From the IMG/VR virus record IMGVR_UViG_3300031787_007614, positions 62,001-126,000 of that record: a DNA stretch of 64,000 nucleotides, one strand, 5' to 3'. Shown piece by piece: positions 10,191 through 64,000 of this stretch (the stretch's first letter is position 1; every line of letters starts with the position of its first letter). A model generated the notes under the pieces. That model was not told the origin of the DNA. It worked only from the letters and a program-made list of their open reading frames with translations, and searched no databases. The translations under genes and the position numbers were made by a program.

Positions 10191-11582
10191 TCAGCAGTTC
10201 CATTTTCTCAATGCTAGAGCCTTGCGTGTGGGTTTGCCGTTGGGTTTTTTCATTGGGCCTTTAACGCCTGACATTCTGGCGCAGAATGATTTGCGTCTTT
10301 TTGCTGCCTTAGAGCCTTTCTTTAGTTTTGAAGGCTTGGTGGTCACGGCCATTTGCAATTTTGATCCAGGATTTTCTCTACGATATGATGCCACACCTTT
10401 GGCGTTTAATCCGCCTTTTTTGCTCTTGCCTTCTTTACGTCGCCAGGCGGCTGTTTCATACAGCACATTGTCCGGCATGGCTTCAAACTGTTCCCACACT
10501 AGATCTTCGCTCACACGATTTTTCACAGCCATTTCTGCTACCAACTCTTGCATGGCTTCAAACATTTCATCCACTTCGGGATCCACTTCGTCTGACGCTT
10601 CCTCTGAATACATATAGTCCCACACAGCAACCAGCATTGACTTGGCCACAGCAATCTTTTCTTGACACCATTCAGGCAAGTTATCACCTGATTGAATTAG
10701 ATCGTCAATACCTTCTACAGCACGTTGTAGCGTTTCTAAGTTGTTGTCGGCCATGCCTGCTTCGTCGTCATACTCGCCATTGTAGTCTTCCGCTACACCT
10801 TGCTCACTAAATCGCTGACGATAACTGTTGGGATTCATTGACGATCTAGAACCAACTACAGCATTACCTTCGCCACTCAGCAACAAATCATACATGAGTT
10901 TGATTACTTTTAAAGGGCTGTTCATTCTTTCCAGGGCATTTTTAAACCATTCAACTTTTTCTGGTTTCATTGGCTTGGCACTGGGCTTGCTGATCAATGC
11001 CAGTGCCTGTGCTTTCAACGTGGACAAGTCTCTGATTTGTTCAAGACGTTTTAGATCCTCAATATCAAAGTTGTAATCAGCTTTGCCTTCCGCCACACCT
11101 TGCTGATCTTTGGGCTCGTCAAACAAGGAGTCTATGGCTTTTTTGCCGCCATACAACACAGCCAACACAATGCCAGCAGGGATGGCATATTTAAAAGCCA
11201 AAGCAGACAGGTCAAGCAATGTTTTCTCGTCAATGGCCGTGCCCACCTTGGCAGCAATATCTTTGGCAATGTCTGCCACAGAAGATCCAATTTCGTAAGC
11301 ACCAGCACCCATGCCAATTTTTCCAGCATTCTTGGCTGCAATTTCTGTGCCAGCTCGAGCAGCCTGACCTGCACCGCGAGCTCCTGCTTGTCCTGCTTGG
11401 CCAAGAACCTGTGCTATTTTTGGGGCAGCAGCCATGAACAGTCTTGCACCTGCTGCCAACAACGGCGCAAATTCATCAAGCTGTTGTTCTTTGACCATGC
11501 CGGCCTTTTTCTTTTTAGCAATAGCAATGGCTGCCTGTTGAGCAGGCGACGCTGCTTCTAGTATTACGTCATTTAGTTTCAT
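10191..11582 (-). CDS. modular internal head (ejected) protein; basic C-terminal domain resembling DUF6321
   Basis: likely start MKLNDVILE at 11582; repeated QGVAE sites; C-terminal AAWRRKEGKSKKGGLN...RRKSFCARMSG...KALALRKWNC. Confidence 0.7.
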   Translation of the reverse strand: MKLNDVILEAASPAQQAAIAIAKKKKAGMVKEQQLDEFAPLLAAGARLFMAAAPKIAQVLGQAGQAGARGAGQAARAGTEIAAKNAGKIGMGAGAYEIGSSVADIAKDIAAKVGTAIDEKTLLDLSALAFKYAIPAGIVLAVLYGGKKAIDSLFDEPKDQQGVAEGKADYNFDIEDLKRLEQIRDLSTLKAQALALISKPSAKPMKPEKVEWFKNALERMNSPLKVIKLMYDLLLSGEGNAVVGSRSSMNPNSYRQRFSEQGVAEDYNGEYDDEAGMADNNLETLQRAVEGIDDLIQSGDNLPEWCQEKIAVAKSMLVAVWDYMYSEEASDEVDPEVDEMFEAMQELVAEMAVKNRVSEDLVWEQFEAMPDNVLYETAAWRRKEGKSKKGGLNAKGVASYRRENPGSKLQMAVTTKPSKLKKGSKAAKRRKSFCARMSGVKGPMKKPNGKPTRKALALRKWNC

Positions 11583-34658: not shown

Positions 34659-36866
34659 ATGGCAGAAGTAATAAGAGAAGCAGGGTACACTGGGTTTGTC
34701 CAGAGATTGACCTGGGTGCATGGCAACGCTGTGCCTGTGACTGCATACTTGTGGGGCGGTGGTGGTGCAGGCGGCGCTAGGGCGCCAACTGGGTCATTTA
34801 CAACCAGTTATCAAGGCGATATTCAGCAGGATCCTTGGTTTGGTCCACTGATACCAAATAAATCTGGTTATTATGAACTTGGTTATAACGTTTTTAACGA
34901 AGGACCAGAAACCTATTACCCAATAGCATGGGTTGTGGTAATAAATGGAATTATAGTTTATGGTTCTCCAGTTCCGCCACCGCCACCTGCACCAAATCCA
35001 GCCAGACTTAATAATCCACCACCCACAATCCTGGCTAACCCAACAACGTTTCAAGGCGTAACAATATACACACAAAATGGAGTACAGTCTCCGTATTTTG
35101 TGAAAGTTTACGATTTTGATTATACCACGTACACAAGTGGCGCAGCAGTAGGCGGCACCGGCGGCGGCGGTGCGTATGCACAGGTTAATTTTACCATCAA
35201 CGAAGGTGACATACTTGATGTTGCAGTAGGACAAGGTGGTGGTGCCGGCGGCGTCACTGCATTGGCCTCTGGAATAACACCAGGCGGCGAAGCTGGTGCT
35301 GGTTTACTTACATCGAGTCTTTTTAACACTGTTACTAACACTGCCTCCCCACCTGTTTATCGTGAATTCAGTCCGACCTACTGCACATTTTTAAACAATT
35401 ACGGAGTTTGGGTAGACCCGCCTTCGGCATCAGTGTTTGACAGAACATATACCGTGGCATTTCCGTCGACTGGCAACTATCAATTTACCATATGCTCTAA
35501 TGGACGAGCAGATTTTTATGTAGATGGTGAATTTGCGGCATTCAGTTATGATCCACAAATTCCCTGGACTGTGGGAGTTATTGTTACAGCTGGCAATAGA
35601 ACTATTAGAATAGTGTCAACTGCTGCTACCGGCAAACGAGGCGCCGTTGCATTAGTTATTGGATCTGGTGTTAATTATGCCGGTGCCCGGGGCGGTGATG
35701 GAATAGCAGGTGGTGGCGGAGCCGGGGGTGGCGGCGGCGCTACAATAATTTTAAAGAATGATGTGATAATTGGTGCAGCCGGTGGCGGAGGCGGAGGCGG
35801 AGCTGGTGGTATCACCAGTGCAGGTGCTAGTGCTCCGGGCGCACGCGGTCAGAATGCCGCAGGATTTTTTGCTGGTCAAAATGGCACCAGCAGAGTGTAT
35901 TATAATGGCGGTGGCTGCGGCGGAGGCGGTGGCGGCATCACAGGTGGCCGTGGTGGTGCATCCCCAGGTGCAGGCGGCGACGGCGGCACATCAGGATCAT
36001 TTGGTGGCAGCACTGGAATTGAAGTGCAAAATCCTTCGGGTAGAACTCCTGGTGGCACAACCAACATTTATTATCGAGCAGGTGTTGCATTAGGTGGACA
36101 GTCTCAAGCCGTTGTTGGCAATCTTGAAGGAAATGGCAGAAACGGCTATGCGGTATTTGTGTTTGAAGTGCCGGACATACATGTAAAAACTGCTGGCACA
36201 TGGAATCCAGTGACCAAAACTTTTGTAAAATATACTGGACTATGGCGCTTGGCTAAGAAAAAATTTATAAAAATAAACGGCGAATGGGTACCAACAATTG
36301 CATCAACCAGTCCGGTGTTTGCAAATTATCTTGGCCTTGGAACAAATCCATTGCCAGCAGATTTTGAAGAATTACCACCACCTCCTCCACCAAGTGGCGG
36401 CGGAGATGGGTATGGCGGTTGGGACGGTGGTGGAGGAGGTGGTGGTGGCAAAGTGATCTGTACAGCACTGTACGAACTTGGCTACATGGAAAAAGAAATA
36501 TTTGAATACGACCAAGCCTATGGTTTATGGTTGTATCAAAATGATTTTGTGTCTTATCGTGGCTACAGAGCCTGGGCTGATGTACTTGTACAATATGTCA
36601 AAGGGCAAGGTCGACCCATGTTGCCTAAATTGTTATTCTGGAAAACCGCTGATGAACAACAACGATTGAGTCAGCAGTTGGCCATATCACTAGCACGAGT
36701 CATCGGTGGCGCATTCTCTAAAGAAATTGCTCGACGTGCTGGGCACAACATTCCATTCAGCATTGGAGGATGGGCATGTGTGACTGTGGGTCTTGCAGTT
36801 AACAAAGCCATTGGTTATATTGTAAAGAAAATTAAAAAGACCAGTACTATTGATTACAAGGAATAA
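34659..36866 (+). CDS. Gly-rich tail fibre / receptor-binding protein with C-terminal KVICT domain
   Basis: YLWGGGGAGG and GGGGAY Gly-rich domain, central beta domain, poly-G linker, then KVICTAL...GYRAWA, a hydrophobic helix and a basic tail. Confidence 0.75.
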   Translation: MAEVIREAGYTGFVQRLTWVHGNAVPVTAYLWGGGGAGGARAPTGSFTTSYQGDIQQDPWFGPLIPNKSGYYELGYNVFNEGPETYYPIAWVVVINGIIVYGSPVPPPPPAPNPARLNNPPPTILANPTTFQGVTIYTQNGVQSPYFVKVYDFDYTTYTSGAAVGGTGGGGAYAQVNFTINEGDILDVAVGQGGGAGGVTALASGITPGGEAGAGLLTSSLFNTVTNTASPPVYREFSPTYCTFLNNYGVWVDPPSASVFDRTYTVAFPSTGNYQFTICSNGRADFYVDGEFAAFSYDPQIPWTVGVIVTAGNRTIRIVSTAATGKRGAVALVIGSGVNYAGARGGDGIAGGGGAGGGGGATIILKNDVIIGAAGGGGGGGAGGITSAGASAPGARGQNAAGFFAGQNGTSRVYYNGGGCGGGGGGITGGRGGASPGAGGDGGTSGSFGGSTGIEVQNPSGRTPGGTTNIYYRAGVALGGQSQAVVGNLEGNGRNGYAVFVFEVPDIHVKTAGTWNPVTKTFVKYTGLWRLAKKKFIKINGEWVPTIASTSPVFANYLGLGTNPLPADFEELPPPPPPSGGGDGYGGWDGGGGGGGGKVICTALYELGYMEKEIFEYDQAYGLWLYQNDFVSYRGYRAWADVLVQYVKGQGRPMLPKLLFWKTADEQQRLSQQLAISLARVIGGAFSKEIARRAGHNIPFSIGGWACVTVGLAVNKAIGYIVKKIKKTSTIDYKE

Positions 36867-36867
36867 T

Positions 36868-37113
36868 ATGTTTACCATACAAGAACTTACACAGAAATTT
36901 CATGCGCTTGATGACAGCACAAAAGACAAGGTGTTTGAACAGGTGACCAAGAACGCAGCTCAGTATAATGAAATTATACCCAACGTCCCATTATTTCTTT
37001 ACATACTGCAAGGTGATGGTGGTGTTCCTGTGTGGGCCAAAAACAGTTCAATTCTGTTGCAGTATAAGGCTTGGGCATCAAACCCAAAAAATCGATCTAA
37101 ACTGCAAAGCTAG
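36868..37113 (+). CDS. hypothetical protein
   Basis: start MFTIQE directly after the upstream stop, AAGGA RBS. Confidence 0.65.
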
Positions 37114-37417
37114 ATCCACAACCACAGGTTGAAGAAGCCTGTGGATTGTTGATTACAAAACTGGCACTCATCAAATCTTCTTTGTAGTCAATTGATGCGC
37201 CGTTGAGATATTGCATGCTCATAGCATCCACAACTACCTTGACTTCATCATATGCAAAGTCAAAATCATCTTCGTTTTTGGTTTCTTCAAATGTGAATCC
37301 ATAACTGAATCCTGAACAGCCGCCGCCCTGCACAAACACTCTGAGCATGAGATTAGGGTTATTTTCTTCAGCAATCAGTTCGCGTAATTTTGACACAGCA
37401 CCAGTTTCTAAATTCAT
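37097..37417 (-). CDS. erpA: iron-sulfur cluster insertion protein ErpA (HesB/IscA family)
   Basis: [34 protein letters not shown]; start MNLETG coupled (TAATG) to SOD. Confidence 0.9.
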
Positions 37418-37965
37418 TATAGTCTTTCGTTGCAAACGTCCCAGTTGATTATCTTCCACACGTTGTTGAGATAACCTTCTTTGTCCGCTTGATAATCTAA
37501 CGCCCATGCATGTTCCCACCAGTCTACCAAACAGCAGATGTCTGTGCGTACAGCATGATTGGCGATGGTCTTGATGTCACCACCAGTACTCAAATACACC
37601 CAACCTGATCCTTGGATCTTCATGGCAGTTTCTTTGAACTGCTCCTTGAAGTCTTCCCAAGTTTTAAATTTTTCTTCTATCAACGCGAGTACTGCGCCGC
37701 GGGGACGGTTGGTAGCTTTAGGAGCCCTAAGCTGAGGGAAGAACTTATTGTGTAAAAAACTGCCAGCACGATTAAAATCCGCATTGCCTTCTCCTGCGTT
37801 GTAACGCTTTGCATAGCCTTTGGCCAAGTGGTCAAAGTGATAGTCTATTGTGGCTCGGCTCATCACAGGCTCAAGATCCTTGATGCCGTAGGGCAAAGGA
37901 GTGGTTTCCAGTTTTGCCGGACGTGTGCTTGCTTCTACAAGATTGATGTGATTGCGAATTTCCAT
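37417..37965 (-). CDS. Fe/Mn superoxide dismutase
   Basis: LPY..LEP.MS, IDYH, FLHN, QGSGW, DWWEHA; all four metal ligands appear present. Confidence 0.9.
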
Positions 37966-37973
37966 AAACTTAT

Positions 37974-38975
37974 TTATTTTGCAATGTCGGCAATTTCTGC
38001 AATCTCAGTTATTTCGCCAGTGTAAAAAAACACCAGTTTTTCGTTAGGGGTTTTATAACAACTTTTTTGTGGGTCCACCCAAGGTACTAGTTTTTCTAAA
38101 TCCAGTGGTTCTTCAATGTTGTAGACCCATGCTTGTACAGGTTCGTTTTTCAATCTAACTGAATCTCTGTTCCACTGCCCCAACAACATGCCATAACTAA
38201 AACTCCACTCTTGTGGTTTTCGATGCACAAAATTTACTTTCCAAACTTCTGGATTGTATCTAATCAATGGCACAGTTTCTTCAGTGCAATGCACTTCGAT
38301 GGTGATGGGTGTGGGTTTTTGTTCAGTCCAGTCTTTACAAAAACGACGCCACCAGGTTTGTATTTGCATGCCCGTGGCCAACTGTGTTTGTAAAAACTGA
38401 GGAATGTATTCTGGATCGTATTTGGTATGACGAACAATTGTACGGTCCAGGCGCATTTGTTGAGCCACATCATCAAAATGCATTTCTATTCCATGGTCAA
38501 CATTGTCTAGTCCCAACATCTGTTCAAAATGTTCAGTTGACTCGATCAACGTACCAGGTCCCCATTGCGTAAAATTTGATTTAGGAGTACCGTACACAAT
38601 TACTGGAATATTTTCAGCTGGCAATCCATTCAAGATCAACGCTGCCAGTCGATTGTTGCCCACAGTAACATCGCCGGTGTCACACATCACAAATGGAGGA
38701 AAGAAAAACTTTTCTCGGCGGTACTTGTATGTCATGTCGTTTATTTTGCTAATTTTTCTTGACGCATCAGCATCATCAGACTCTATTGCAGTTTTGACCA
38801 CACTGTTGAAACAAGTTTCTACATATGAATCATAAAACGCCTGGGGAATCCCAGTCAAATAATACATTTTGAGATCAGGCATGGTTTCAAGCCAGCCGGT
38901 TCCATATTTGCGAACTATGTAGCTTGGACCGTTTTTTTGATCGGTAAGATATTGTATGCTTTCTTTTACTGACAT
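37974..38975 (-). CDS. hypothetical protein with a possible ParB/Srx-like N-terminal motif
   Basis: PPFV...VGNNRLAAL...IPVIV; start MSVKES at 38975. Confidence 0.6.
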   Translation of the reverse strand: MSVKESIQYLTDQKNGPSYIVRKYGTGWLETMPDLKMYYLTGIPQAFYDSYVETCFNSVVKTAIESDDADASRKISKINDMTYKYRREKFFFPPFVMCDTGDVTVGNNRLAALILNGLPAENIPVIVYGTPKSNFTQWGPGTLIESTEHFEQMLGLDNVDHGIEMHFDDVAQQMRLDRTIVRHTKYDPEYIPQFLQTQLATGMQIQTWWRRFCKDWTEQKPTPITIEVHCTEETVPLIRYNPEVWKVNFVHRKPQEWSFSYGMLLGQWNRDSVRLKNEPVQAWVYNIEEPLDLEKLVPWVDPQKSCYKTPNEKLVFFYTGEITEIAEIADIAK

Positions 38976-39643
38976 TATTGTTCCCTCTTTGTTGGCATTA
39001 ATCGATAACCTAGACCTTTGACAAATTCCCATGACATTGAGTCTGCTTCAAAGTCTTCTCGCATGGCTGTGCCACCATGCAGTTTGCAAAAACTATATTC
39101 TGTTGCGTAAAAATTCATTCCAGTAAAATAACTTATGTTTGCTAATCTTTCAAGCCCCAGGCCATGATTGTGAGTACACATCTGCCAACTGTGCCCGGCC
39201 ACTATCCAATGTCTACAAGGCTCCGGTAACAAGGAAGTGTGATGTAAAAAATCAACATCATTGTTAAAAAAAATACTTTGTTCGTTGTCTAACAAATATC
39301 GTTGCACAAGATGTGATGTTTGCTCATGTTGTCCTGAACTTTTTAAGATATTTAATGCAACCCAAAGATCTGCGTCTGTTGGTGTTTCTGTTGGATTGTT
39401 TCGTAGATCATTATTGTAAGTCCAACAGTACCGCTGAAAAGTGTTACGCAGACTCCGATCGTTCCAGTCAAATCGATTGTGTGTTAGGCTGTTGACTATA
39501 CATTTGAAATTGTATTCTCGCAACTGATGTATGAGATTTGCATAAAAATAGTCTTTAAAAAATTGCCCGCCTGCAGGCTCCCAACAATCCAACAAGATCA
39601 ATCCATCTACAGTTGGTATTGTGTTGGTTTTTGAAACTATCAT
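38975..39643 (-). CDS. divergent cysteine-hydrolase (isochorismatase-fold)-like protein
   Basis: GLILLDCWE and IVAGHSWQMC motifs; family call tentative. Confidence 0.5.
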   Translation of the reverse strand: MIVSKTNTIPTVDGLILLDCWEPAGGQFFKDYFYANLIHQLREYNFKCIVNSLTHNRFDWNDRSLRNTFQRYCWTYNNDLRNNPTETPTDADLWVALNILKSSGQHEQTSHLVQRYLLDNEQSIFFNNDVDFLHHTSLLPEPCRHWIVAGHSWQMCTHNHGLGLERLANISYFTGMNFYATEYSFCKLHGGTAMREDFEADSMSWEFVKGLGYRLMPTKREQ

Positions 39644-39861
39644 TTGCGTCTTGTGATACGACCTCGTGATAGATCGTATGGGCTGAATACAATTTCTACT
39701 CGATCGCCAAGAAGAACTTTGATGTTGTTGGTCCGCATACGCCCTGACAGGTATCCAATCACCACATTATCTATGCTATCTAATCTGATGCGAAACATAG
39801 CGGCAGGCAAAATCTCCTCTACTGTTCCTTCCATACTGATTGTTTCTTCTTGTTTGGCCAT
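39640..39861 (-). CDS. infA: translation initiation factor IF-1
   Basis: MAKQE.I.MEGTVEEILPAAMFRI...SGRMR.NNIKVLLGDRVE...SPYDLSRGRIT.R. Confidence 0.95.
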   Translation of the reverse strand: MAKQEETISMEGTVEEILPAAMFRIRLDSIDNVVIGYLSGRMRTNNIKVLLGDRVEIVFSPYDLSRGRITRRK

Positions 39862-39873
39862 ATAAGTGTTTAC

Positions 39874-40260
39874 TTATTCGAATTTCAATTCCGCAGTGAT
39901 CTTCTTCAGTCGATCAAAACGGAAACTGCGCCATTCTTGTTTTTCTAGGTCAAACACACGAAGGCTATGTGGATCAGGTTCCTTGCGCGGTTTTTTGCTT
40001 TCTTTAACAATACCATCCACTGGTAATACTGGAGTTATTGCAGCTGAGGGAATGAAATCCCAGTTGAGTGTGCAAAGCATTTCGCGATCGGTGCCATCTG
40101 CTTTGACAAAGGTCACTTTGATGGTACTTTTTTGTAGCAGGCTCTTGATCCAATCACGGATGATGGCCTTGTTGACATCATCTGCCTCTTGATATTGTGT
40201 GCCTGGCGCTCCCTTGAGCAGTCGCACCACTTCTTGTTTTTCCCATGTAGCCATATCCAT
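39874..40260 (-). CDS. WYL-like / SH3 beta-barrel protein
   Basis: VTFVKADGTDREMLCTL, VFDLEKQEWRSFR; start MDMATW after GGAG. Confidence 0.7.
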   Translation of the reverse strand: MDMATWEKQEVVRLLKGAPGTQYQEADDVNKAIIRDWIKSLLQKSTIKVTFVKADGTDREMLCTLNWDFIPSAAITPVLPVDGIVKESKKPRKEPDPHSLRVFDLEKQEWRSFRFDRLKKITAELKFE

Positions 40261-40298
40261 TTGGAGTTCTCCTCTATAAGTTAATTGACGTTTTTTCT

Positions 40299-41459
40299 TC
40301 ATGCTAAAAATTTTGTCAATGCCAGCACCACATTGGTACCACCAAATGCAAAGCTGTTGTTCAAACACACATCTTGTTCATGCTCAACAACCTCAGTTGG
40401 TAGGTACACACCTTCAGGAATTGCAGGATCAGGATCAGTTAGATTCCAATTGGGAATAATTTGATTTGTTTTTAGCACAGCCAAACAAGCCAGCAGTTCC
40501 ATGGCTCCAGAGTTGCCCAACAAGTGCCCGTGCAGTGCCTTGGTTGAACTGATGGGAACGCCACTGCCAAATACTTTTTGTATACTACTTAATTCAACCA
40601 AGTCTCCAACAGGTGTGCCTGTGCCATGTGCGTTGATATAGGTCACACGACTTGGATCAATACCATTCAGTGCAGATTGCATGGCAGAGATCTGACCTTG
40701 TTCACTGGGCTTGGTTAGAGTTTCGCTGCCACAACTGATACCATATCCCACAATTTCTGCATGTATCACAGCATTTCGAACCAGCGCATGATCCAAACTT
40801 TCTAGAACATAAACAACACTGCCTTCGCCCAAGATGATGCCATCTCGTGTGGCACTGAATGGTGCAGACTTTGTGCCCATGGCCCGCATGGCCCGCCATT
40901 GGTCCACTAAAATGGGACTGAGGCAAAATTCGGCGCCGCCGGCTGCCATAACGCTGACCTCGCCATGTTTGATGGCTTTGTATGCTTCTCCAATAGACAC
41001 ACTGCTGGAAGCACATGCCGCTGTGTGTGTGAACACAGGACCTGTGATGTTGTCTTTTGACGCAATAAAACTGGCTGCGCCACTGCTCATTGATGATACC
41101 AAACTGTTTGGACGCACTCGACCTTTATCCTGGAATTCAAGAATGGTGTTGTTCACTTCGTAGGCAGCACCTGCGCCTGTACCAATGTAAACACCATCCA
41201 CACTGGTTTTTGCATCTGCTTTTGCTTGTTGGTATGCCAGCATGGTGGCGCGAGCAAACAAACTTGTGGCCGCAGTATCATAACGATCAAATTGATCATT
41301 GATGTTGCTGTGTCCTAATCCAACCTTGGCAGTGTTGGCCTGGAGAGTTTCACTAAAAATGATGCCTGATGTTCCTGCATACATGGCAGCAACAACTTGA
41401 TCATAACTATTGCCCAATGGAGTAATGCAACCCACTCCTGTAATAACTACTCTATTCAT
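40299..41459 (-). CDS. beta-ketoacyl-ACP synthase (FabF / NodE-like)
   Basis: RVVITGVG, TAACASS (Cys), INAHGTGT (His), KALHGHLLG (His), NSFAFGG. Confidence 0.95.
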   Translation of the reverse strand: MNRVVITGVGCITPLGNSYDQVVAAMYAGTSGIIFSETLQANTAKVGLGHSNINDQFDRYDTAATSLFARATMLAYQQAKADAKTSVDGVYIGTGAGAAYEVNNTILEFQDKGRVRPNSLVSSMSSGAASFIASKDNITGPVFTHTAACASSSVSIGEAYKAIKHGEVSVMAAGGAEFCLSPILVDQWRAMRAMGTKSAPFSATRDGIILGEGSVVYVLESLDHALVRNAVIHAEIVGYGISCGSETLTKPSEQGQISAMQSALNGIDPSRVTYINAHGTGTPVGDLVELSSIQKVFGSGVPISSTKALHGHLLGNSGAMELLACLAVLKTNQIIPNWNLTDPDPAIPEGVYLPTEVVEHEQDVCLNNSFAFGGTNVVLALTKFLA

Positions 41460-42205
41460 GTTTTGATCAGTCGAATAAATTGTGCCGCATAGTCAACTTC
41501 CCACCACTGCTCACGTTGATTCCACCGTTGTGGATTGGCATGATGATTGTTGTGCCATTCTCCAATGACTAGGGCTAGATAGCTATTTGAACTGGTATCC
41601 TTTGTGGCATGATTCTGATAGGTGGTCAAACCGTGAGTGTGACACACGGTGTTCACAAAACCCATGGCCAACAATGCTCCTGCATTAGCAATACTATAGC
41701 ACAAAAACAATACGGGGTCAATGGCCAATAGCACCAATGCAAACGTCAAAACAATCAATGCGTAATAATTGTGAGTGAACTTCATCCAAGGATCTCTTAG
41801 ATCTCTAATGCCATCCCACATGCTGAGATTGGACAAGTTCCAATTGAACAGTATCACATTGAGAATTCCAATGTCTGGAGCATGTGGATCTTGTGCAGTG
41901 TCTGTGTGTACATGATGGGCTCGGTGGATGATGGAATAACCAACTGGTGACCCAAAACAGGCCAAACAAGAACTCACACACAAAAATGCATGCCAAAACG
42001 GAGTGACTGTGTAACTGCGGTGTGAGAAGTATCTATGCAATCCTGCATGGTGTGAGATGAACAACAAAAAACTGTAAAAGAACACAAGGTATATTGCGTA
42101 CCACCAATGCCATTGATATACCAATACTGGTATGCCCAGCATCGCAACAATCAATTGAACTGAGAGAACCTGTTTGGTTCTGTCAGGATCACCTTGCCAA
42201 ATCAT
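41456..42205 (-). CDS. membrane fatty acid desaturase (delta-9-like, His-box family)
   Basis: HRYFSH, HRAHH, DPH, EWHNNHH boxes; hydrophobic segments. Confidence 0.92.
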   Translation of the reverse strand: MIWQGDPDRTKQVLSVQLIVAMLGIPVLVYQWHWWYAIYLVFFYSFLLFISHHAGLHRYFSHRSYTVTPFWHAFLCVSSCLACFGSPVGYSIIHRAHHVHTDTAQDPHAPDIGILNVILFNWNLSNLSMWDGIRDLRDPWMKFTHNYYALIVLTFALVLLAIDPVLFLCYSIANAGALLAMGFVNTVCHTHGLTTYQNHATKDTSSNSYLALVIGEWHNNHHANPQRWNQREQWWEVDYAAQFIRLIKT

Positions 42206-42480
42206 TTTTTAACACGATTGACCGGATCGTTCACAGCTTCGGTCAAACTGTCAATGATTTCTGCCAAGTTAGCTGGCTGACTCATGTCAGCAGAGTTTAC
42301 TTTGATGCCAAGTTCATCTTCAACATCAAATATCATTTCAATCACAGACAGTGAATCAATCTTGGGATTGATATTTTGCAAGTCTGCAAGAGGTGCATCC
42401 TCTGCAAAGTTGTCAATGTCTAGATCGTACTGTTTTTTGCAAATCCTCAAAATAACTGTTTTGACTTCGTCGCGTGTCAT
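42202..42480 (-). CDS. acyl carrier protein
   Basis: acidic 92 aa; IDSLSVIEMIFDVEDELGI phosphopantetheine-attachment motif. Confidence 0.9.
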   Translation of the reverse strand: MTRDEVKTVILRICKKQYDLDIDNFAEDAPLADLQNINPKIDSLSVIEMIFDVEDELGIKVNSADMSQPANLAEIIDSLTEAVNDPVNRVKK

Positions 42481-42499
42481 GTTTTACCTTTCTATAATT

Positions 42500-42766
42500 T
42501 CATGCAAATTTTAACAAAAATACAAGATACTTTTTCTCATCCACAATCTCAACTTCTCGACTGTATCCATTCATGTGAGTGTCCGATGGCAACAACCGGA
42601 TGCCGTATGTGTCCCGGAACCATGCTATTGTATCCATATCAGTTTTACAATGCGTTCTGCCTTCTTCTGACTGTCGACACTTTTGCATTCGTACCCAAAA
42701 GCCAGCATCACCTAGAATGGTGTCTAGTCTTTTTTCCGGCGTTGAATACAAGTCGTTGTTAGCCAC
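42500..42766 (-). CDS. small hypothetical protein of the F-x-L-x-W C-terminal motif family
   Basis: ends EIVDEKKYLVFLLKFA. Confidence 0.7.
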   Translation of the reverse strand: MANNDLYSTPEKRLDTILGDAGFWVRMQKCRQSEEGRTHCKTDMDTIAWFRDTYGIRLLPSDTHMNGYSREVEIVDEKKYLVFLLKFA

Positions 42767-43157
42767 GGCGCATGGTTGCTATATCATGTGCTTCTTCATT
42801 TGAGAAGATGGGCACAGCATTGGACTTGTGCATGGTACCCACACCAATCATCTTGGTGCCAGTGTACTGCGGAATTGCCTTGCTGGACACAGGGCCCAAC
42901 ACAGAGTCAGCACGACTAGGAATGTTGTGTCCTGTGGGACGGCCTATAGGTGTGCTCAATTTGTAGTCCAGTGCAGGTGCTTTCATGGCACGAGTGCGGC
43001 GCTTTTGGTCAGCATCCACTTCCCACTTCTTTTGCAGTTCTTTCCACGAAGCATCAAGCTCGCGGGCTTTTTTTGCTTCCTCGGCGTTGCGAAACTTGAC
43101 TTTGCCTTTGCGCTTGCCGCCAAGACTGAGACTGGGGTGGTGGAGGTGCATGCTCAT
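42759..43157 (-). CDS. hypothetical phage protein
   Basis: 132 aa, basic; GTMHKSNAVPIF motif. Confidence 0.75.
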   Translation of the reverse strand: MSMHLHHPSLSLGGKRKGKVKFRNAEEAKKARELDASWKELQKKWEVDADQKRRTRAMKAPALDYKLSTPIGRPTGHNIPSRADSVLGPVSSKAIPQYTGTKMIGVGTMHKSNAVPIFSNEEAHDIATMRRG

Positions 43158-43306
43158 GGTAGGTCTTTCAAAGGTCGCTCAGGGCGGGTGGTACAAAATT
43201 CACAGGTGGGATCGTCACACTTGGAGTCAATCCATTCATTGATCACTGGATTGTAGTAAGCGTCATGCTCCGCAGAATATGCAGTGTCTTTTTCATCATT
43301 GATCAT
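43154..43306 (-). CDS. 50-aa Cys-containing protein (not in ORF track)
   Basis: MINDEKDTAYSAEHDAYYNPVINEWIDSKCDDPTCEFCTTRPERPLKDLP*; ATGA-coupled on both sides. Confidence 0.7.
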   Translation of the reverse strand: MINDEKDTAYSAEHDAYYNPVINEWIDSKCDDPTCEFCTTRPERPLKDLP

Positions 43307-43485
43307 TTGCTTCTGGCCTTTCTACATGCTTCGCGCATGGCAGTTGAAAAATCAGGGCTGATTTCGCTCCAAGTGCAGTCAATCCTGCGTTCACTTGATT
43401 GCAAGGAATTACTCCACACAATAAAAACAAACATCAAAATGGCCAGAGCAACCACAGCCAGCATTATCAATGTGTCACGTATCAT
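43303..43485 (-). CDS. small membrane protein
   Basis: N-terminal TM helix; two Cys. Confidence 0.65.
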   Translation of the reverse strand: MIRDTLIMLAVVALAILMFVFIVWSNSLQSSERRIDCTWSEISPDFSTAMREACRKARSK

Positions 43486-43712
43486 TTGCGTAGGAGTTCC
43501 ATGGTGTACTCAACATCTCGCATGTGAGCAACAGGCTTGAGCCAGCCGTTGTTGATGCATTCTGCAATGACTTGTTTATATTGTGCAGGACAATGATTAC
43601 TAACTTCAAATCCAGCCCTAGGCACTACTCGAATGCCATCGGGCGAGAATGTGAAATCTGAATCATTTTGACGCAGTGTTTTGTGGGGGCGGCTTGCAGA
43701 AATCTTAATCAT
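43482..43712 (-). CDS. hypothetical protein (probably leaderless mRNA)
   Basis: ATG 6 nt after the -10 box. Confidence 0.65.
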   Translation of the reverse strand: MIKISASRPHKTLRQNDSDFTFSPDGIRVVPRAGFEVSNHCPAQYKQVIAECINNGWLKPVAHMRDVEYTMELLRK

Positions 43713-43718
43713 GCATGC

Positions 43719-43747
43719 AGTATAGCATATCCTGATTTATTGGTCAA
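43719..43747 (-). promoter_or_regulatory. repeat-family early promoter
   Basis: TTGACC-aataaatcaggatatgc-TATACT. Confidence 0.7.
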
Positions 43748-44062
43748 TTACTTAAAAAGTATTAAGGCCATCAAAACCGCTTGCACAATGAATCCTGCAC
43801 CCACTGTGATGATGTTGAGCATGTCTTTGAGCACCACTGCCCGTAAGAACAGCAGGACCAGGCCGGCCCACATAAACAGCACAATGTCCAAACTGGGTGT
43901 GCGATCACTAAGTCCGGTCATCAGCGCCAAAAGTGTGGGAATGGTTGCGGCATGAATCACAATGGCCGCTAGCCAACCTAGTGTTTCTGCGGAGATTTTT
44001 GGCAAGTGATCTTTCAGCCAAAGTTGCAGGATTTCGGCTGTGTGTTGCAAGTCAAATTTCAT
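43748..44062 (-). CDS. 3-TM membrane protein
   Basis: three hydrophobic helices; ETLGW...IP motif. Confidence 0.7.
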   Translation of the reverse strand: MKFDLQHTAEILQLWLKDHLPKISAETLGWLAAIVIHAATIPTLLALMTGLSDRTPSLDIVLFMWAGLVLLFLRAVVLKDMLNIITVGAGFIVQAVLMALILFK

Positions 44063-44667
44063 CGTTTATCTCCGTAAAAAATGTGTCGGCCAATCTTTTC
44101 AATACGCGGTTTGCCCCAGTTGGGATTCACATAGTCTGCATGATAATATAGGGCGTTTTTCAAGCCAGGCAATCGGAAGTTTTCCAACAGCACCTTCTTG
44201 GCCACTTCTTCGCTTTCGCGCCACAGTGGAGTATAAACTGCTCGTGTTTTGTGATTGGTTTCGCAGTACCAGGAGAACTGGCATACTACCTTTTCATAAA
44301 ACACATTTTTTTGATAAACCACGCCACACACGGAATCAGGAAAACGTCCAGATTCCACACGGTTCATTGTGACTTGAGCCACTGCCACTTTGCCTTCAAA
44401 AGGCTCTGAGGCTGCTTCCCAGTAGATGTTACGGGTAAGGCAGTCCAGTTGTCGAGTGCGCTCGGCAGCAGACACATAGCCTGCTGGTAGATTTCCTGTT
44501 TGTTCGCGCAAGGCATCCAGTCGGCTTTGACACACTGCAATCACAGTGGCAACGACCAACCAGAAGCCTAGGGCTTTCAGGATGCGTGAGCTCCATGTGG
44601 CCCACCTGTTGAGAGAGATAGTTTTTTCTTTCATGGTAGTTTTACTTACTGGAATGGTTGCTATCAC
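44059..44667 (-). CDS. cell wall hydrolase (SleB / Hydrolase_2 family)
   Basis: CLTRNIYWEA.SEP.EGKVAVAQVTMNRV, CQFSW, YYHADYVNPNW, IGRHIFY. Confidence 0.9.
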   Translation of the reverse strand: MIATIPVSKTTMKEKTISLNRWATWSSRILKALGFWLVVATVIAVCQSRLDALREQTGNLPAGYVSAAERTRQLDCLTRNIYWEAASEPFEGKVAVAQVTMNRVESGRFPDSVCGVVYQKNVFYEKVVCQFSWYCETNHKTRAVYTPLWRESEEVAKKVLLENFRLPGLKNALYYHADYVNPNWGKPRIEKIGRHIFYGDKR

Positions 44668-44721
44668 CGGAATTACCGGGCCAAAATGGTGCCGTTTTTA
44701 AACAAACGGCGCAGTTAACTA

Positions 44722-45534
44722 TCAAAACTTGCAGACCGGTATTGGCAGCATCTTGTGCATGTTTCTAGCACGAATGTCTTGGTACCGCTTGAGTTTTTTT
44801 CTATCATCTGCTGACAATTTGGCGCTGCCAGGCATGTCGGAGTCCACAGCCTTGCATCGTTGCAAAAAGTCCAAGGCCATCATGCGCTCAAGATCTGGGT
44901 AGCTCATGCCCAGTTGACCTTCGTCTGTGCGCCCATCATCCCACAAGCCGTCGGTGGGTGCGGCATCAATGATTTCTTGTGGCAGCCCAAACTCTCTACC
45001 CATATCCCATACTTCTGTTTTCATGCAGTCGCCGATGGGGCTGATATCCACACCACCATCACCATACTTGGTAAAGAAGCCCACACCAAAGTCTTCCACT
45101 CGGTTGCCGGTGCCTACTACAATACCACCATGGCATTGTGCAATTTGGTACAAGGTCATCATACGCAATCTAGCACGTGAGTTGGCAAAAGCCAGTTCAA
45201 CTTGTGATGCATTTTCTGCATCACAAAATGGCACAGTTTTCTTTTCAAACGCAGAGAACACAGACGTCAAATCCATGCTCATGTGTGTGACGTTTTTGTA
45301 GCGTTCCATCAACCAGGTAGCCTGCATTGAACTGCGATTGTCCAGCTTCTTGTTTTGGCGGATGGGCATTTGCACCACAATGGTTGTGAGTCCTGTTTCG
45401 GCGCATAATGCACTCACAACAGATGAGTCAATCCCACCTGAGATCCCTACAACTAGTGTAGAGATCTTGTTTTTTGTTGCGTATTGTCGGATCCATTTTA
45501 CAATGTGCTTGATACGTTGCTTTGGTGTTACCAT
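44722..45534 (-). CDS. nadE: NH3-dependent NAD+ synthetase
   Basis: GISGGIDSS, NSRARLRM, GTGN, GFFTKYGDGG, PTDGLW, DEGQLG; start MVTPK at 45534. Confidence 0.93.
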   Translation of the reverse strand: MVTPKQRIKHIVKWIRQYATKNKISTLVVGISGGIDSSVVSALCAETGLTTIVVQMPIRQNKKLDNRSSMQATWLMERYKNVTHMSMDLTSVFSAFEKKTVPFCDAENASQVELAFANSRARLRMMTLYQIAQCHGGIVVGTGNRVEDFGVGFFTKYGDGGVDISPIGDCMKTEVWDMGREFGLPQEIIDAAPTDGLWDDGRTDEGQLGMSYPDLERMMALDFLQRCKAVDSDMPGSAKLSADDRKKLKRYQDIRARNMHKMLPIPVCKF

Positions 45535-46064
45535 TTGACCTCCGGCTTGGGCATTGCTTTTAGTTTGTTCCATACTTCTGCTTTTTCCTTGCATTTCTTT
45601 TCCAGCTTGCGATAGCGTTCTCCCAGTCGGCGCAGATCATCCCACTCTCGTTCCAGTTCAGGATTTGGTGTGAGAATGTTCAGGCGTTCTTCAACCTTTT
45701 CCATCCAGTCTTTAAGACTCTTGCCATTGATGTCAAGATCAGCTTTGTCCCCTCTAAGACTCATCTTGCCACCTTGTTCAATCGTAGATCCTACTGCACT
45801 GTAATTTGCACCAATTGTAAAACTGCCTGTGGTTGTGTTGTTTGTGGTCCAAACAGTGTTGGAGCCAGTGGCACCGTTGAGTCCACCAATGGTGTATCCG
45901 CCAGTGATGTTGGTGGTATCACTTATGATTACAGTTGGCATGGTATTTGCATCAAATGCACTTACCAATGGGGGAATAGCACCGTAAGAAGGGTCGGTTG
46001 TTAGGTCGTTATATTCGTATTCTTTGAGGTTGAGGTTTACCCAGTCGTTTTTATAAGTTGCCAT
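45528..46064 (-). CDS. hypothetical protein
   Basis: 178 aa; Thr-rich N-terminus and coiled-coil C-terminus. Confidence 0.65.
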   Translation of the reverse strand: MATYKNDWVNLNLKEYEYNDLTTDPSYGAIPPLVSAFDANTMPTVIISDTTNITGGYTIGGLNGATGSNTVWTTNNTTTGSFTIGANYSAVGSTIEQGGKMSLRGDKADLDINGKSLKDWMEKVEERLNILTPNPELEREWDDLRRLGERYRKLEKKCKEKAEVWNKLKAMPKPEVKW

Positions 46065-49540: not shown

Positions 49541-49600
49541 TTGAACTCCTTTTTGCTTAACATGTCCATATTATAGCATTTTGGCAATTATTGGTCAACC
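49541..49600 (-). repeat. early promoter/RBS repeat element
   Basis: GGTTGACCAATAATTGCCAAAATGCTATAAT...AAAAAGGAG. Confidence 0.8.
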
Positions 49601-50091: not shown

Positions 50092-50148
50092 CTCCTTTGT
50101 GTTAACTAGTCTCTATTATAGCAAATTGGGATTTTTTGGTCAACCAAA
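50092..50148 (-). repeat. early promoter/RBS repeat (57 bp, 1 mismatch to 50421-50477)
   Basis: direct sequence comparison. Confidence 0.9.
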
Positions 50149-50415
50149 TTCATACATGTGCTGGGCCATGCTGGGATCCAATTGAACCAGGGCAGTTGCG
50201 GCCGCATTAAGCTCGCGATAGCGTCGATTGACTTCTGCACGAGGCAGTTCACCGTCACAGCTGAGATTCTCAGGGCTAAGAGCGCAGTCAATCATTTTGG
50301 CCACTCGCAGGCGGCCTGCCTCAGTTTGAATTTCGTACAAGGGTTCTGTACGCTGACCTCGGAACAAGGCCTGGTATTTGTTCTGACGATCAATGTAGGC
50401 TTGCAGTGCTTTCAT
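50140..50415 (-). CDS. hypothetical early protein
   Basis: LSPENLSCDGEL motif; bracketed by the repeats. Confidence 0.75.
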   Translation of the reverse strand: MKALQAYIDRQNKYQALFRGQRTEPLYEIQTEAGRLRVAKMIDCALSPENLSCDGELPRAEVNRRYRELNAAATALVQLDPSMAQHMYEFG

Positions 50416-63483: not shown

Positions 63484-63512
63484 AGTATAGCATTATTCTC
63501 GGAAGAAAACAA
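63484..63512 (-). promoter_or_regulatory. sigma70-type promoter for clpP
   Basis: TTGTTT-N17-TATACT. Confidence 0.5.
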
Positions 63513-64000
63513 TGCGTGATCTACTCAATTTACTCGACAACATACTGACTGAAGAAGTCAACGCTCAATTTGCCCCTGAACTTGAAGGCATGAAAGACGT
63601 GATTTCTAGAAGAATCAAGGATCTTCCAGACGACCCTGCTACTGCAAAAGCTCTTAAAGAAATTGAAGATCTGCTGTCGCATATTTCACATGGTGGAAGA
63701 ATGGGATCAATCAGTAAAGAAATTGAAGCTGTGCAAGATCAAGCTGTGCAAGATGCTAAAAAAGTTCTGGCAAGACTAGCAATGAACATCATGGAAGAAG
63801 TTGGTGCCACGCCGTTGCAACGTGCTGATTTTTTCAATACCTGGAAAAGCGATCGGTTGGTCAACACCCAGGCCCTGCTGAGCAATGAAAAAGTTGACTT
63901 TCCTGTGGTATTCACTGGTTATACTGAAAATCCAGTCACAAAAGAATTTGTTGACGAAGTTATGATGATCCAGGAATTAGGCATGGGACGAGGCGAATTT
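63512..64000 (+). CDS. probable internal head protein, truncated by the window edge
   Basis: 163 open codons [15 protein letters not shown]...GMGRGEF; N-terminal L-x-E propeptide-like segment. Confidence 0.7.

What the first reader, a model, noticed from the sequence alone, without database searches (positions are those of the whole stretch)
37417..37965. Superoxide dismutase with an apparent capsid-targeting propeptide
Seen: the SOD begins [13 protein letters not shown] before the canonical LPY motif and follows a late-type TAAATA. Similar short N-termini ending in (I/L)-x-E occur on the putative internal proteins here (MKLNDVILE at 11582; [14 protein letters not shown] at 63512). Established: T4 internal proteins carry ~10-residue capsid-targeting peptides that the prohead protease cleaves after (I/L)-x-E. 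The usual H30/H31 pair is replaced ([10 protein letters not shown]), although the four metal ligands appear to remain. Inference: the SOD is packaged and either injected with the DNA or protects the virion from superoxide.
Basis: partly seen in the sequence, partly recalled or inferred. Interest (0 to 1): 0.65.

Follow-up and report, generated by a model that had tools for sequence, protein, structure and literature searches.

The report
Phage superoxide dismutase with capsid-targeting propeptide
A 364-kb freshwater jumbo phage encodes a trimmed iron/manganese superoxide dismutase whose short N-terminal peptide ends in the cut site of the phage's own T4-type head protease and is conserved in very distant relatives, so the enzyme is probably loaded into the capsid, although no experiment has yet shown this.

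Summary
Window 37417-37965 (minus strand) encodes a 182-aa Fe/Mn SOD with all four metal ligands, H30/H31 replaced, a shortened helical hairpin, and about 17 extra N-terminal residues ending in L-V-E|A.

A bare (I/L)-x-E near an N-terminus occurs at chance frequency in this genome (14%). Three results make the SOD case more than chance:
- The extension and motif persist in 24 of 25 extension-bearing relatives from clusters under 50% identity.
- On a domain tree the extension and motif occur in the earliest branches.
- The extension resembles the N-terminus of the acidic protein next to the prohead protease.

The genome encodes a T4-type (S77) prohead protease. The protein in the scaffold position has 18 (I/L)-x-E sites against 7 expected. 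All four sites in the capsid protein lie in its first 43 residues.

TAAATA sits 5 nt before the SOD start, is kept in 67 of 75 relatives, and marks the virion genes.

The PA5oct homologue carries the same kind of peptide and was detected in virion mass spectrometry, but that list also holds obvious lysate enzymes.

A conserved, overlapping ErpA/IscA-like gene points to a cytoplasmic role as well. Packaging is likely but unproven; injection is speculation.

The parts
37971..37976 (-). TAAATA promoter-like element, 5 nt upstream of the SOD ATG. Its TAA is the stop codon of the upstream ORF.
   Evidence: Sequence. TAAATA is the most enriched upstream hexamer: 79 of 410 genes against 5 expected. 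It is kept 4-6 nt before the SOD start in 67 of 75 relatives, whatever the upstream gene. Of 20 sampled TAAATA genes, 13 hit PHROGs in the tail, connector or head-and-packaging categories.
37417..37965 (-). Fe/Mn superoxide dismutase CDS, 182 aa plus stop, of the short-hairpin clade.
   Evidence: PDB sequence matches down to 1.8e-24. AF2 pLDDT 94. Foldseek TM 0.8-0.85 to Fe/Mn SODs.
37933..37965 (-). Codons 1-11 ([11 protein letters not shown]): putative capsid-targeting propeptide, with predicted cleavage after E11 (L-V-E|A).
   Evidence: [ILV]-x-E is conserved in 24 of 25 extension-bearing representatives and in all of about 120 close relatives. AF2 predicts helix 3-12 at pLDDT 50-70, not confidently placed against the domain. 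Profile score is 15.9 bits, the top of 410 N-termini.
37909..37932 (-). Codons 12-19 (ASTRPAKL): linker that would be the mature N-terminus.
   Evidence: Nearly invariant in close relatives. Low-confidence, non-helical in the AF2 model.
37420..37908 (-). SOD catalytic domain, residues 20-182. Ligand codons: H43 37837-37839, H72 37750-37752, D148 37522-37524, H152 37510-37512.
   Evidence: Ligands are 39/39 in the short-hairpin clade, Y34 is 37/39 and E170 is 39/39. H30 is Leu in 29/39, the Gln146 position is His in 34/39, and Y174 is mostly lost.
37097..37417 (-). ErpA/IscA-type Fe-S carrier gene. Its ATG overlaps the SOD stop (TAATG).
   Evidence: Pfam Fe-S_biosyn 2.9e-17. It follows the SOD in 57 of 76 related loci, mostly with a 1- or 4-nt overlap. 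It also lies near the SOD of a 42%-identical relative.
39640..39861 (-). IF-1 (infA-like) gene. In most relatives it is the gene directly upstream of the SOD.
   Evidence: Pfam eIF-1a 1.5e-17. Upstream sequences in relatives. Synteny. Contig joints skipping 37869-39652 and 37950-39870.
10191..11582 (-). 463-aa protein with an N-terminus MKLNDVILE|AAS and a basic C-terminal DUF6321 domain. Candidate second carrier of the targeting peptide.
   Evidence: Profile score 12.3 bits, third of 410. DUF6321 1e-21. Relatives attach peptides like the T4 CTS, as I recall it, to the same C-terminal domain.
63512..64000 (+). Start of a 526-aa ORF (runs off the window) beginning [14 protein letters not shown]. 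Weak candidate.
   Evidence: Profile score only 3.0 bits. A 46%-identical homologue keeps MRDLL..LL and a shifted L-Y-E|A. No PHROG match.

Best explanation
The gene encodes a phage-lineage-specific, trimmed Fe/Mn superoxide dismutase made as a precursor.

Proposed mechanism:
1. It is transcribed with the virion genes from a TAAATA element.
2. Its first 11 residues form a short amphipathic helix that docks the precursor onto the assembling prohead core, in the manner of the 10-20-residue capsid-targeting sequences of T4 internal proteins and Alt.
3. The phage's T4-type (Peptidase_S77) prohead protease then cuts after L-V-E11. This leaves a roughly 19.7-kDa mature enzyme, starting ASTRP, inside the head with the DNA.
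4. From there it is either delivered into the next host with the genome, giving superoxide protection before any phage gene is expressed, or it stays in the capsid.
5. Precursor that is not packaged probably also works in the infected cytoplasm with the co-translated ErpA/IscA-like Fe-S carrier. This phage encodes several ORFs with radical-SAM-type cysteine motifs near their N-termini, and these would need such protection.

Shown: the SOD fold and ligands; the conserved extension and motif; the protease gene; the motif signatures on scaffold and capsid proteins; the link between TAAATA and virion genes.

Inferred: targeting, cleavage, presence in the virion, delivery, catalytic activity.
For: - Fe/Mn SOD: Pfam, PDB, AF2 and Foldseek. 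Ligands are invariant across the clade.
- Extension conservation: 24 of 25 full-length short-hairpin representatives with an extension of at least 8 aa carry [ILV]-x-E, with E at residues 7-17, against a 14% chance rate.
- In about 120 close relatives the residues before the motif vary, while the motif and the following [14 protein letters not shown] are fixed.
- On a tree built from the domain alone, extension plus motif occupies all early branches, with median end branches of 0.96 changes per site.
- AF2 predicts helix 3-12 at pLDDT 50-70, against over 95 for the domain.
- Protease system: Peptidase_S77 at 83.9 bits and phrog_207.
- The protein in the scaffold position has 18 [IL]-x-E sites against 7.0 expected from its own composition (0 of 5000 shuffles reach this). 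Control motifs are not enriched.
- The capsid protein has four sites, all within residues 1-43 (positional p = 1.4e-4), the last directly before NASSG.
- PA5oct shows the same pattern. Its gp153 has 19 sites against 8.9 expected and is absent from the virion MS list.
- A profile built from distant SOD extensions ranks the SOD first and the acidic protein beside the protease second among 410 N-termini. Scores of 10 bits or more occur in 5 of 410 N-termini against 2 of 1610 internal controls (p = 0.005).
- TAAATA evidence. A separate sigma70-like class precedes small ORFs.
- The PA5oct homologue (37% identity, N-terminus ending I-A-E|A) is flagged ESI-MS/MS.
- T4 CTS facts come from PMC3012670 and PMC5694885.
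Against: - There is no direct evidence of packaging or cleavage.
- The PA5oct virion list also contains RNR, ThyA, GTP cyclohydrolase, QueD, FtsH, ligase and ClpP, so detection may be carry-over from the lysate.
- In PA5oct, CTS-like N-termini are not significantly enriched among MS-positive proteins. The simple motif gives 15/93 against 52/290. The profile at 8 bits or more gives 4/93 against 4/290, p = 0.10.
- The SOD is translationally coupled to an ErpA/IscA-like gene, even in 42%-identical relatives. Another relative sits beside a radical-SAM gene. Both fit a purely cytoplasmic function.
- About ten short-hairpin representatives and Vibrio phage 2.275.O lack the extension, so it is dispensable for the enzyme.
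- The SOD peptide differs from the M-R-x-x-E-F-I-x-E type seen on other candidate internal proteins.
- No gp33-type late coactivator was found, so 'late' is inferred from gene association only.
- An internal L-I-E sits in the folded domain.
Confidence: 0.55

Rival explanations
1. The SOD is a cytoplasmic auxiliary metabolic enzyme only. It works in the infected cell with the co-translated ErpA/IscA-like carrier to protect or repair Fe-S enzymes. Candidates are the phage ORFs with radical-SAM-type cysteine motifs near their N-termini and host enzymes. The N-terminal helix then serves another purpose, such as oligomerisation in place of the shortened hairpin, partner binding or regulation.
For: - The SOD stop overlaps the ErpA-like start in most relatives.
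- The IF-1 / SOD / Fe-S_biosyn order holds at 42% identity.
- One relative has a radical-SAM neighbour.
- Several ORFs in the genome show radical-SAM-type cysteine motifs near their N-termini.
- Fe/Mn SOD is listed as a phage auxiliary metabolic gene in metagenomic work (PMC12542629).
- The hairpin that helps form oligomer interfaces in canonical SODs is shortened.
- The PA5oct MS list is not specific.
Against: - An oligomerisation or partner helix gives no reason for a near-invariant Glu preceded by I/L/V two residues earlier and followed by a small or polar residue. That pattern holds over roughly one change per site of divergence.
- AF2 does not place the helix on the domain with confidence.
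- The peptide resembles the N-terminus of the core-module protein beside the protease.
- The gene carries the element associated with virion genes.
- The two roles are not mutually exclusive.
Confidence: 0.3
2. The protein is a repurposed SOD fold that no longer dismutates superoxide efficiently. It would serve as an internal head protein, a metal carrier or a decoy, as some poxvirus SOD homologues do.
For: - H30 is replaced by Leu in 29 of 39 clade members.
- Its cross-dimer partner Y174 is mostly lost.
- The hairpin is cut by about 20-25 residues.
- The FeSOD Gln69 position is not Gln.
- Catalytically inert viral SOD homologues are known (PMC10583209).
Against: - All four ligands, Y34, E170 and W128 are essentially invariant across a very divergent clade.
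- The Gln146 position holds His in 34 of 39 members. From my own knowledge, not tested here, this substitution occurs in active archaeal and actinobacterial Fe SODs. The best Foldseek matches include Aeropyrum, Sulfolobus and Pyrobaculum SODs.
- Conservation of this kind implies that metal binding, and probably catalysis, is under selection.
Confidence: 0.08
3. The extension is a chance feature or an annotation artefact, and the true start lies downstream.
For: - The bare motif occurs in 14% of N-termini.
- Gene callers over-extended some relatives upstream, through the promoter-like region.
Against: - No alternative start keeps the conserved LPY/LEP segment.
- The extension is conserved at the protein level in dozens of clusters under 50% identity.
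- TAAATA keeps a fixed distance to this ATG in 67 of 75 relatives.
Confidence: 0.02

Closest known systems
Capsid-targeting sequences of T4 internal proteins IPI-III and Alt, cleaved by the gp21 prohead protease
   Same: - A short N-terminal propeptide in the 10-20 residue range (11 here).
- The propeptide ends in (I/L)-x-E.
- The genome encodes a gp21-family (S77) protease.
- The protein in the scaffold position is dense in the same motif.
- The capsid protein's propeptide carries several sites.
- Cargo proteins are diverse.
Sources: PMC3012670 and PMC5694885.
   Different: - The cargo is a recognisable housekeeping-type metalloenzyme, not a small basic anti-restriction protein or an ADP-ribosyltransferase.
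- The peptide is not identical among the phage's candidate cargoes.
- Neither targeting nor cleavage has been shown.
- The phage belongs to the PA5oct / Rak2-like jumbo group, whose capsid protein is 62-65% identical to those phages, not to the T4 group proper.
PA5oct EST35_0261 (annotated hypothetical; sodB in phages MIJ3 and Callisto)
   Same: - 182 aa and 37% identity.
- Same short hairpin and ligands.
- The N-terminal peptide ends I-A-E|A-A.
- The head-module order is the same and the scaffold is motif-dense.
   Different: - Its neighbours are ClpX, ClpS, FtsH and a heat-shock protein, not IF-1 and ErpA.
- It has its own spaced promoter-like region with a Shine-Dalgarno sequence.
- It is the only relative with a virion MS flag.
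Virion-packaged Cu/Zn SODs of large eukaryotic viruses (chlorovirus PBCV-1 A245R, Megavirus, vaccinia A45R)
   Same: A viral SOD expressed late and carried in the particle. The PBCV-1 authors predict that it lowers superoxide during infection (PMC7019647 and PMC10583209).
   Different: The SOD family is unrelated (Cu/Zn against Fe/Mn). The hosts are eukaryotic. No protease-cleaved targeting peptide is involved. No bacteriophage example turned up in my literature searches.
Canonical bacterial and archaeal Fe/Mn SODs (E. coli SodB/SodA type; Aeropyrum, Sulfolobus and Pyrobaculum type)
   Same: Two-domain fold, four ligands, Y34, E170 and W128.
   Different: - Spacing between the first two ligands is 24-29 residues, against 45-61 in canonical enzymes.
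- The H30 / Y174 pair is lost.
- An N-terminal extension is present.
- No PHROG family matches.

Membership tests
Fe/Mn superoxide dismutase (Pfam PF00081 + PF02777) | Both domains recognised above the curated cut-offs | tested here: met
   Sod_Fe_C scores 77.8 bits (cut-off 20.9). Sod_Fe_N scores 28.6 bits (cut-off 27), barely above, and covers only profile positions 5-49 of 82.
Fe/Mn superoxide dismutase (Pfam PF00081 + PF02777) | Four metal ligands (His26, His73/81, Asp, His) | tested here: met
   H43, H72, D148 and H152 are present and are 39/39 in the clade.
Fe/Mn superoxide dismutase (Pfam PF00081 + PF02777) | Second-shell residues Tyr34, His30 and the Gln69/Gln146 position | tested here: inconclusive
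   Y34 is kept. H30 is Leu. Gln69 is absent, and the Gln146 position holds His. From my own knowledge, the His variant occurs in active SODs.
Fe/Mn superoxide dismutase (Pfam PF00081 + PF02777) | Full-length alpha-hairpin with a first-to-second ligand spacing of about 45-60 residues | tested here: not met
   The spacing is 29 residues. The clade range is 24-29, against 45-61 in canonical representatives.
Fe/Mn superoxide dismutase (Pfam PF00081 + PF02777) | Superoxide dismutase activity and metal content | not testable with these tools
   Needs recombinant protein, metal analysis and an activity assay.
T4-type capsid-targeting propeptide (CTS) cargo | N-terminal propeptide of about 10-20 residues ahead of the folded protein | tested here: met
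   An 11-residue helix and an 8-residue linker precede the domain. The first ligand sits 17 residues later than in canonical SODs.
T4-type capsid-targeting propeptide (CTS) cargo | Propeptide ends in (I/L)-x-E, and the motif is conserved | tested here: met
   L-V-E11|A here. The motif is present in 24 of 25 diverse representatives and occupies the early branches of the domain tree.
T4-type capsid-targeting propeptide (CTS) cargo | Genome encodes a gp21-family prohead protease with that specificity | tested here: met
   The gene is present: PF03420 at 83.9 bits and phrog_207. Specificity is only inferred, from 18 against 7 expected sites in the scaffold-position protein and four sites confined to the capsid protein's propeptide.
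T4-type capsid-targeting propeptide (CTS) cargo | The same or a similar peptide sits on several head-internal proteins of the phage | tested here: inconclusive
   The profile ranks the core-module protein second and the DUF6321 protein third. Scores of 10 bits or more occur in 5 of 410 N-termini against 2 of 1610 controls, p = 0.005. The peptides are similar but not identical, and the functions of these proteins are unknown.
T4-type capsid-targeting propeptide (CTS) cargo | Protein found in the virion in processed form | tested here: inconclusive
   Only the PA5oct homologue's ESI-MS/MS flag is available. The supplement with peptide data is not held. The MS list contains likely contaminants, and the enrichment test is not significant.
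T4-type capsid-targeting propeptide (CTS) cargo | The peptide is sufficient to encapsidate a reporter | not testable with these tools
   Needs a fusion experiment in a cultured relative.
T4-type late promoter (TATAAATA with gp55/gp33) | A-T-rich -10-like element enriched upstream of virion genes | tested here: met
   TAAATA is enriched 16-fold upstream of genes. It precedes the sheath, tube, portal, baseplate and adaptor genes. It is distinct from the sigma70-like class.
T4-type late promoter (TATAAATA with gp55/gp33) | Phage-encoded late sigma factor and coactivator | tested here: inconclusive
   The gp33 family PF16805 was not found. I had no gp55 model to search with.
T4-type late promoter (TATAAATA with gp55/gp33) | Late timing of the transcript | not testable with these tools
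   Only metatranscriptome contigs of relatives were found, and they give no timing.

The most novel reading that the evidence does not exclude
Jumbo phages of the PA5oct / Rak2-like supergroup use a T4-style capsid-targeting peptide to load an active Fe/Mn superoxide dismutase into the head and eject it with the DNA. The incoming genome would then arrive with its own antioxidant enzyme. This would be a bacteriophage counterpart of the packaged SODs of chloroviruses and megaviruses, and the first metabolic-type enzyme known to ride a natural CTS.
Probability: 0.3. Interest if true: 0.75.

Novelty: new variant of a known kind. Interest (0 to 1): 0.6.

Why it matters
Known natural cargoes of the T4 targeting system are anti-restriction proteins, Alt and core proteins. 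A conserved targeting peptide on a superoxide dismutase would widen the idea of what phages carry into cells to include stress-protection enzymes.

It would also point to superoxide as a hazard at the very start of infection, or during the free-virion stage, in oxic sunlit freshwater.

Practically, the work does three things:
- It gives a sequence rule (N-terminal helix ending in hydrophobic-x-Glu) for predicting head-internal proteins in PA5oct-like and related jumbo phages.
- It offers a short natural tag that could be tried for loading foreign proteins into such capsids.

PA5oct is cultured, and the paper reports RNA-seq and virion MS data, so the hypothesis is directly testable.

Tried and rejected
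- **Bare-motif enrichment.** [IL]-x-E near N-termini is not enriched genome-wide: 14% against 12-14% in internal windows. I dropped it as evidence.
- **PA5oct virion MS as a discriminator.** I transcribed all 93 MS-positive CDSs and compared them with 290 others. The simple motif gives 16% against 18%. The profile at 8 bits or more gives 4/93 against 4/290, p = 0.10. This is not significant, and the list holds RNR, ThyA, ligase, FtsH and ClpP.
- **PA5oct supplementary tables.** These would give peptide coverage and temporal class but are not held. The 2018 preprint and the MIJ3 and Callisto papers do not mention the protein.
- **Complex prediction.** The prohead protease with SOD residues 1-45 returned no answer, with score 0.00. 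This is evidence neither for nor against binding.
- **gp33-type late coactivator.** PF16805 was not found.
- **Family searches.** PHROGs and Pfam on candidate CTS-bearing proteins of this phage and of PA5oct gave no function, except DUF6321 on the 463-aa protein.
- **RNA runs.** Only metatranscriptome contigs of relatives lie over the SOD/ErpA stretch. They give no transcript ends or timing.
- **Signal peptide or membrane anchor.** I rejected this from the sequence. The peptide is short and amphipathic, has no hydrophobic core and no twin arginine.
- **Coiled-coil composition as the cause of the scaffold's motif density.** I rejected this by shuffling each protein's own residues and by control motifs.

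The large representative search was used because the word search returned only relatives at 82-97% identity, and the claim depends on distant ones.
Full report
**What is there**

Window 37417-37965 on the minus strand is a 182-aa ORF. Pfam recognises the C-terminal Fe/Mn SOD domain strongly (7e-22). It recognises the N-terminal hairpin domain only just above threshold, and only over profile positions 5-49 of 82. PDB sequence matches reach 1.8e-24. An AlphaFold2 model built on 62 aligned relatives has mean pLDDT 94. Foldseek places it on Fe/Mn SODs at TM 0.8-0.85.

The four metal ligands are H43, H72, D148 and H152. K29/H30/H31 are replaced by H/L/A, and Y34 is kept. The window is bases 62001-126000 of a 364,404-bp IMG/VR phage genome with a 127-bp terminal repeat.

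**The SOD belongs to a distinct, phage-associated clade**

The word search returned 3281 hits, but the top 120 were all 82-97% identical. I therefore ran the representative search, which uses clusters at 50% identity or less.

Relatives fall into two classes by the spacing between the first two ligands:
- 24-29 residues, a shortened hairpin. The window's protein is in this class.
- 45-61 residues in canonical SODs, with a few intermediates at 35-41.

Across 39 short-hairpin representatives:

| Feature | Count |
|---|---|
| Four ligands and E170 | 39/39 |
| Y34 | 37/39 |
| H30 replaced by Leu | 29/39 |
| Gln146 position is His | 34/39 |
| Y174 | mostly lost |

The only isolates with this type are the PA5oct-like Pseudomonas jumbo phages (37% identity, also 182 aa) and Vibrio phage 2.275.O. 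Contigs of distant members look phage-like. PHROGs has no family for the protein.

**Is the N-terminal peptide more than chance?**

On its own it is not. [IL]-x-E with E at residues 7-20 occurs in 14% of this genome's 410 predicted proteins, which matches internal control windows. Conservation changes the picture.

- In about 120 close relatives the residues ahead of the motif vary freely, while the hydrophobic-x-E and the following [14 protein letters not shown] are fixed.
- Among full-length short-hairpin representatives from different clusters, 25 have an extension of at least 8 residues. Of these, 24 carry [ILV]-x-E, with E at residues 7-17. The exception has F-T-E.
- Many N-terminal fragments show the same pattern.
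- On a maximum-likelihood tree of the domain alone, extension plus motif occupies all early-branching lineages. The extension is missing in about five places. Median terminal branches are 0.96 changes per site.
- Vibrio phage 2.275.O truly lacks the extension, because a stop lies seven codons upstream.
- A group with C-terminal extensions lacks it too.
- AF2 predicts residues 3-12 as a helix at pLDDT 50-70, followed by a non-helical linker. The domain from residue 20 onward exceeds 95. This fits a detachable peptide better than an integral part of the fold.

**Does the phage have the matching machinery?**

Yes. A Peptidase_S77 (T4 gp21 family) gene lies at genome 262533-263171. It sits in a module ordered portal, 72-aa ORF, 293-aa acidic protein, protease, 364-aa protein, major capsid protein. 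PA5oct has the same order.

- The 364-aa protein in the scaffold position has the highest [IL]-x-E density in the genome, with 18 sites. That is 5.7 times the genome rate, and its own composition predicts 7.0 (0 of 5000 shuffles reach 18). Control motifs such as [IL]-x-D, [IL]-x-K and [KR]-x-E are not enriched.
- The capsid protein has four sites, all within its first 43 residues, the last directly before NASSG (positional p = 1.4e-4).
- PA5oct repeats both signatures. Its scaffold-position protein (19 sites against 8.9 expected) is the one head-module protein missing from the virion MS list, as expected for a degraded scaffold.

These are the hallmarks of T4-style maturation, in which gp21 cuts after Glu in short motifs such as I-T-E and L-T-E, and removes 10-20-residue targeting peptides (PMC5694885 and PMC3012670).

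**Link between the SOD peptide and head proteins**

I built a profile from the extensions of distant SODs, leaving out the window's own family, and scanned all 410 N-termini.

| Rank | Protein | Score (bits) |
|---|---|---|
| 1 | SOD | 15.9 |
| 2 | Acidic protein beside the protease | 14.7 |
| 3 | 463-aa protein at window 10191-11582 | 12.3 |
| 4 | 129-aa protein | 11.9 |

Scores of 10 bits or more occur in 5 of 410 N-termini against 2 of 1610 internal windows (p = 0.005).

Relatives of the 463-aa protein (C-terminal DUF6321) carry N-termini of the M-R-x-x-E/D-F-I/L/V-x-E kind on otherwise unrelated bodies. These are close to the T4 CTS as I recall it.

**The TAAATA element**

TAAATA is the most enriched hexamer upstream of genes, found before 79 of 410 genes against 5 expected. 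It occurs at two distances from the start codon:
- 15-35 nt, with a Shine-Dalgarno sequence.
- 3-8 nt, without one. This class has 32 genes, including the portal gene and the SOD.

Of 20 larger genes I sampled because they carry it, 13 hit PHROGs in the tail, connector or head-and-packaging categories. These include sheath, tube, portal, baseplate and adaptor.

A different, sigma70-like promoter (TTGACC, then a spacer, then TGCTATAAT) precedes about 19 mostly small ORFs.

Upstream of the SOD, TAAATA is kept 4-6 nt before the ATG in 67 of 75 relatives. This holds whether the upstream gene is IF-1, whose stop codon then lies inside the motif, or something else. Co-expression with virion genes is therefore plausible. 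Timing was not measured, and no gp33-type coactivator was found.

**Evidence pointing the other way**

- The SOD stop overlaps the start of an ErpA/IscA-type Fe-S carrier gene (TAATG). That gene follows the SOD in 57 of 76 related loci.
- In a 42%-identical relative the Fe-S carrier gene lies one small ORF downstream of the SOD.
- Another relative sits next to a radical-SAM gene.
- The phage encodes several ORFs with radical-SAM-type cysteine motifs near their N-termini. A fatty-acid desaturase lies nearby.

This argues for a cytoplasmic job in keeping iron enzymes working.

The one experimental hint is weak. The PA5oct homologue is annotated ESI-MS/MS, and the paper reports 93 virion-linked products, including 'virion-unrelated enzymes' (PMC7318152). 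That list contains RNR, ThyA, ligase, FtsH and ClpP. CTS-like N-termini are not significantly enriched in it. The supplement that would show peptide coverage is not held.

**Conclusion**

The best reading (confidence 0.55) is a precursor SOD whose propeptide targets it to the prohead core and is removed by the S77 protease, with an additional cytoplasmic role likely. A purely cytoplasmic enzyme with a helix that serves another purpose remains a serious rival (0.3). An inactive repurposed fold (0.08) and an annotation artefact (0.02) are unlikely.

[quoted passage not shown] My literature searches found no phage SOD described with a targeting peptide or as a virion component.

- Read laying was given 3,601 letters.
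- No alternative genetic code was used.

Noticed in passing
Whole genome. In-window examples: upstream of the ORFs at window 49588-50085, 50140-50415, 61651-61929, 61985-62218 and 62278-62484 (all minus strand).: There is a second, very regular promoter-like class: GGTTGACCAATAA, then a spacer, then TGCTATAAT. This is a sigma70 -35 box plus an extended -10 box. It precedes about 19 mostly small ORFs (68-168 aa), which are presumably early genes.
   Followed up: partly
Whole genome. In-window examples: SOD (37971-37976) and the ORFs at window 11569-12039, 14550-15146 and 57262-57669.: In 32 genes TAAATA ends only 3-8 nt before the ATG and no Shine-Dalgarno sequence is present. If TAAATA is a -10-like element, these messages would be leaderless or nearly so. 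Alternatively, the motif may act in translation initiation or coupling.
   Followed up: partly
window 39640-45594, minus strand: A run of cellular-type genes lies here:
- IF-1, 39640-39861
- WYL_2 domain protein, 39874-40302
- beta-ketoacyl synthase, 40299-41459
- fatty-acid desaturase, 41456-42205
- acyl-carrier-like PP-binding protein, 42202-42480
- NAD synthase, 44722-45594

A phage-borne lipid-synthesis and desaturation module sitting next to the SOD is unusual.
   Followed up: no
window 37974-39643, minus strand: Two ORFs of unknown function (352 and 222 aa, no Pfam match) lie between IF-1 and the SOD. In most relatives IF-1 abuts the SOD directly. Metatranscriptome contigs of relatives join across this stretch, skipping 37869-39652 and 37950-39870. 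This looks like a local insertion.
   Followed up: partly
window 10191-11582. Related loci L095-L102.: The DUF6321 C-terminal basic domain, which ends RKWNC, is attached to very different bodies and N-termini in related phages. Several of those N-termini read M-R-x-x-E/D-F-(I/L/V)-x-E. This looks like a fast-evolving, modular family of candidate internal proteins.
   Followed up: partly
window 34659-36866, plus strand: This 735-aa protein has long Gly-rich and Pro-rich tracts and a hydrophobic C-terminal part. It has no Pfam match and follows a 755-aa tail-fibre-like ORF that has a TAAATA element.
   Followed up: no
genome 277868-279949 (outside the window) and PA5oct gp139: An SbcC-like recombination endonuclease subunit is the second most [IL]-x-E-dense protein. 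It has 17 sites against 10.8 expected from its composition (p = 0.03). Its PA5oct homologue is MS-positive. This is probably a coiled-coil composition effect, but I did not resolve it.
   Followed up: partly
PA5oct (MK797984) 156341-157843, 260677-262099 and 82921-83142: Several MS-positive 'structural proteins' of PA5oct begin with CTS-like peptides: MKIKDILVE, MFLKDVKITE, MRLNEINLIE, MKILEFNLTE and MKINDIITE. They have no Pfam domain. These are candidate internal or ejection proteins of that phage.
   Followed up: partly
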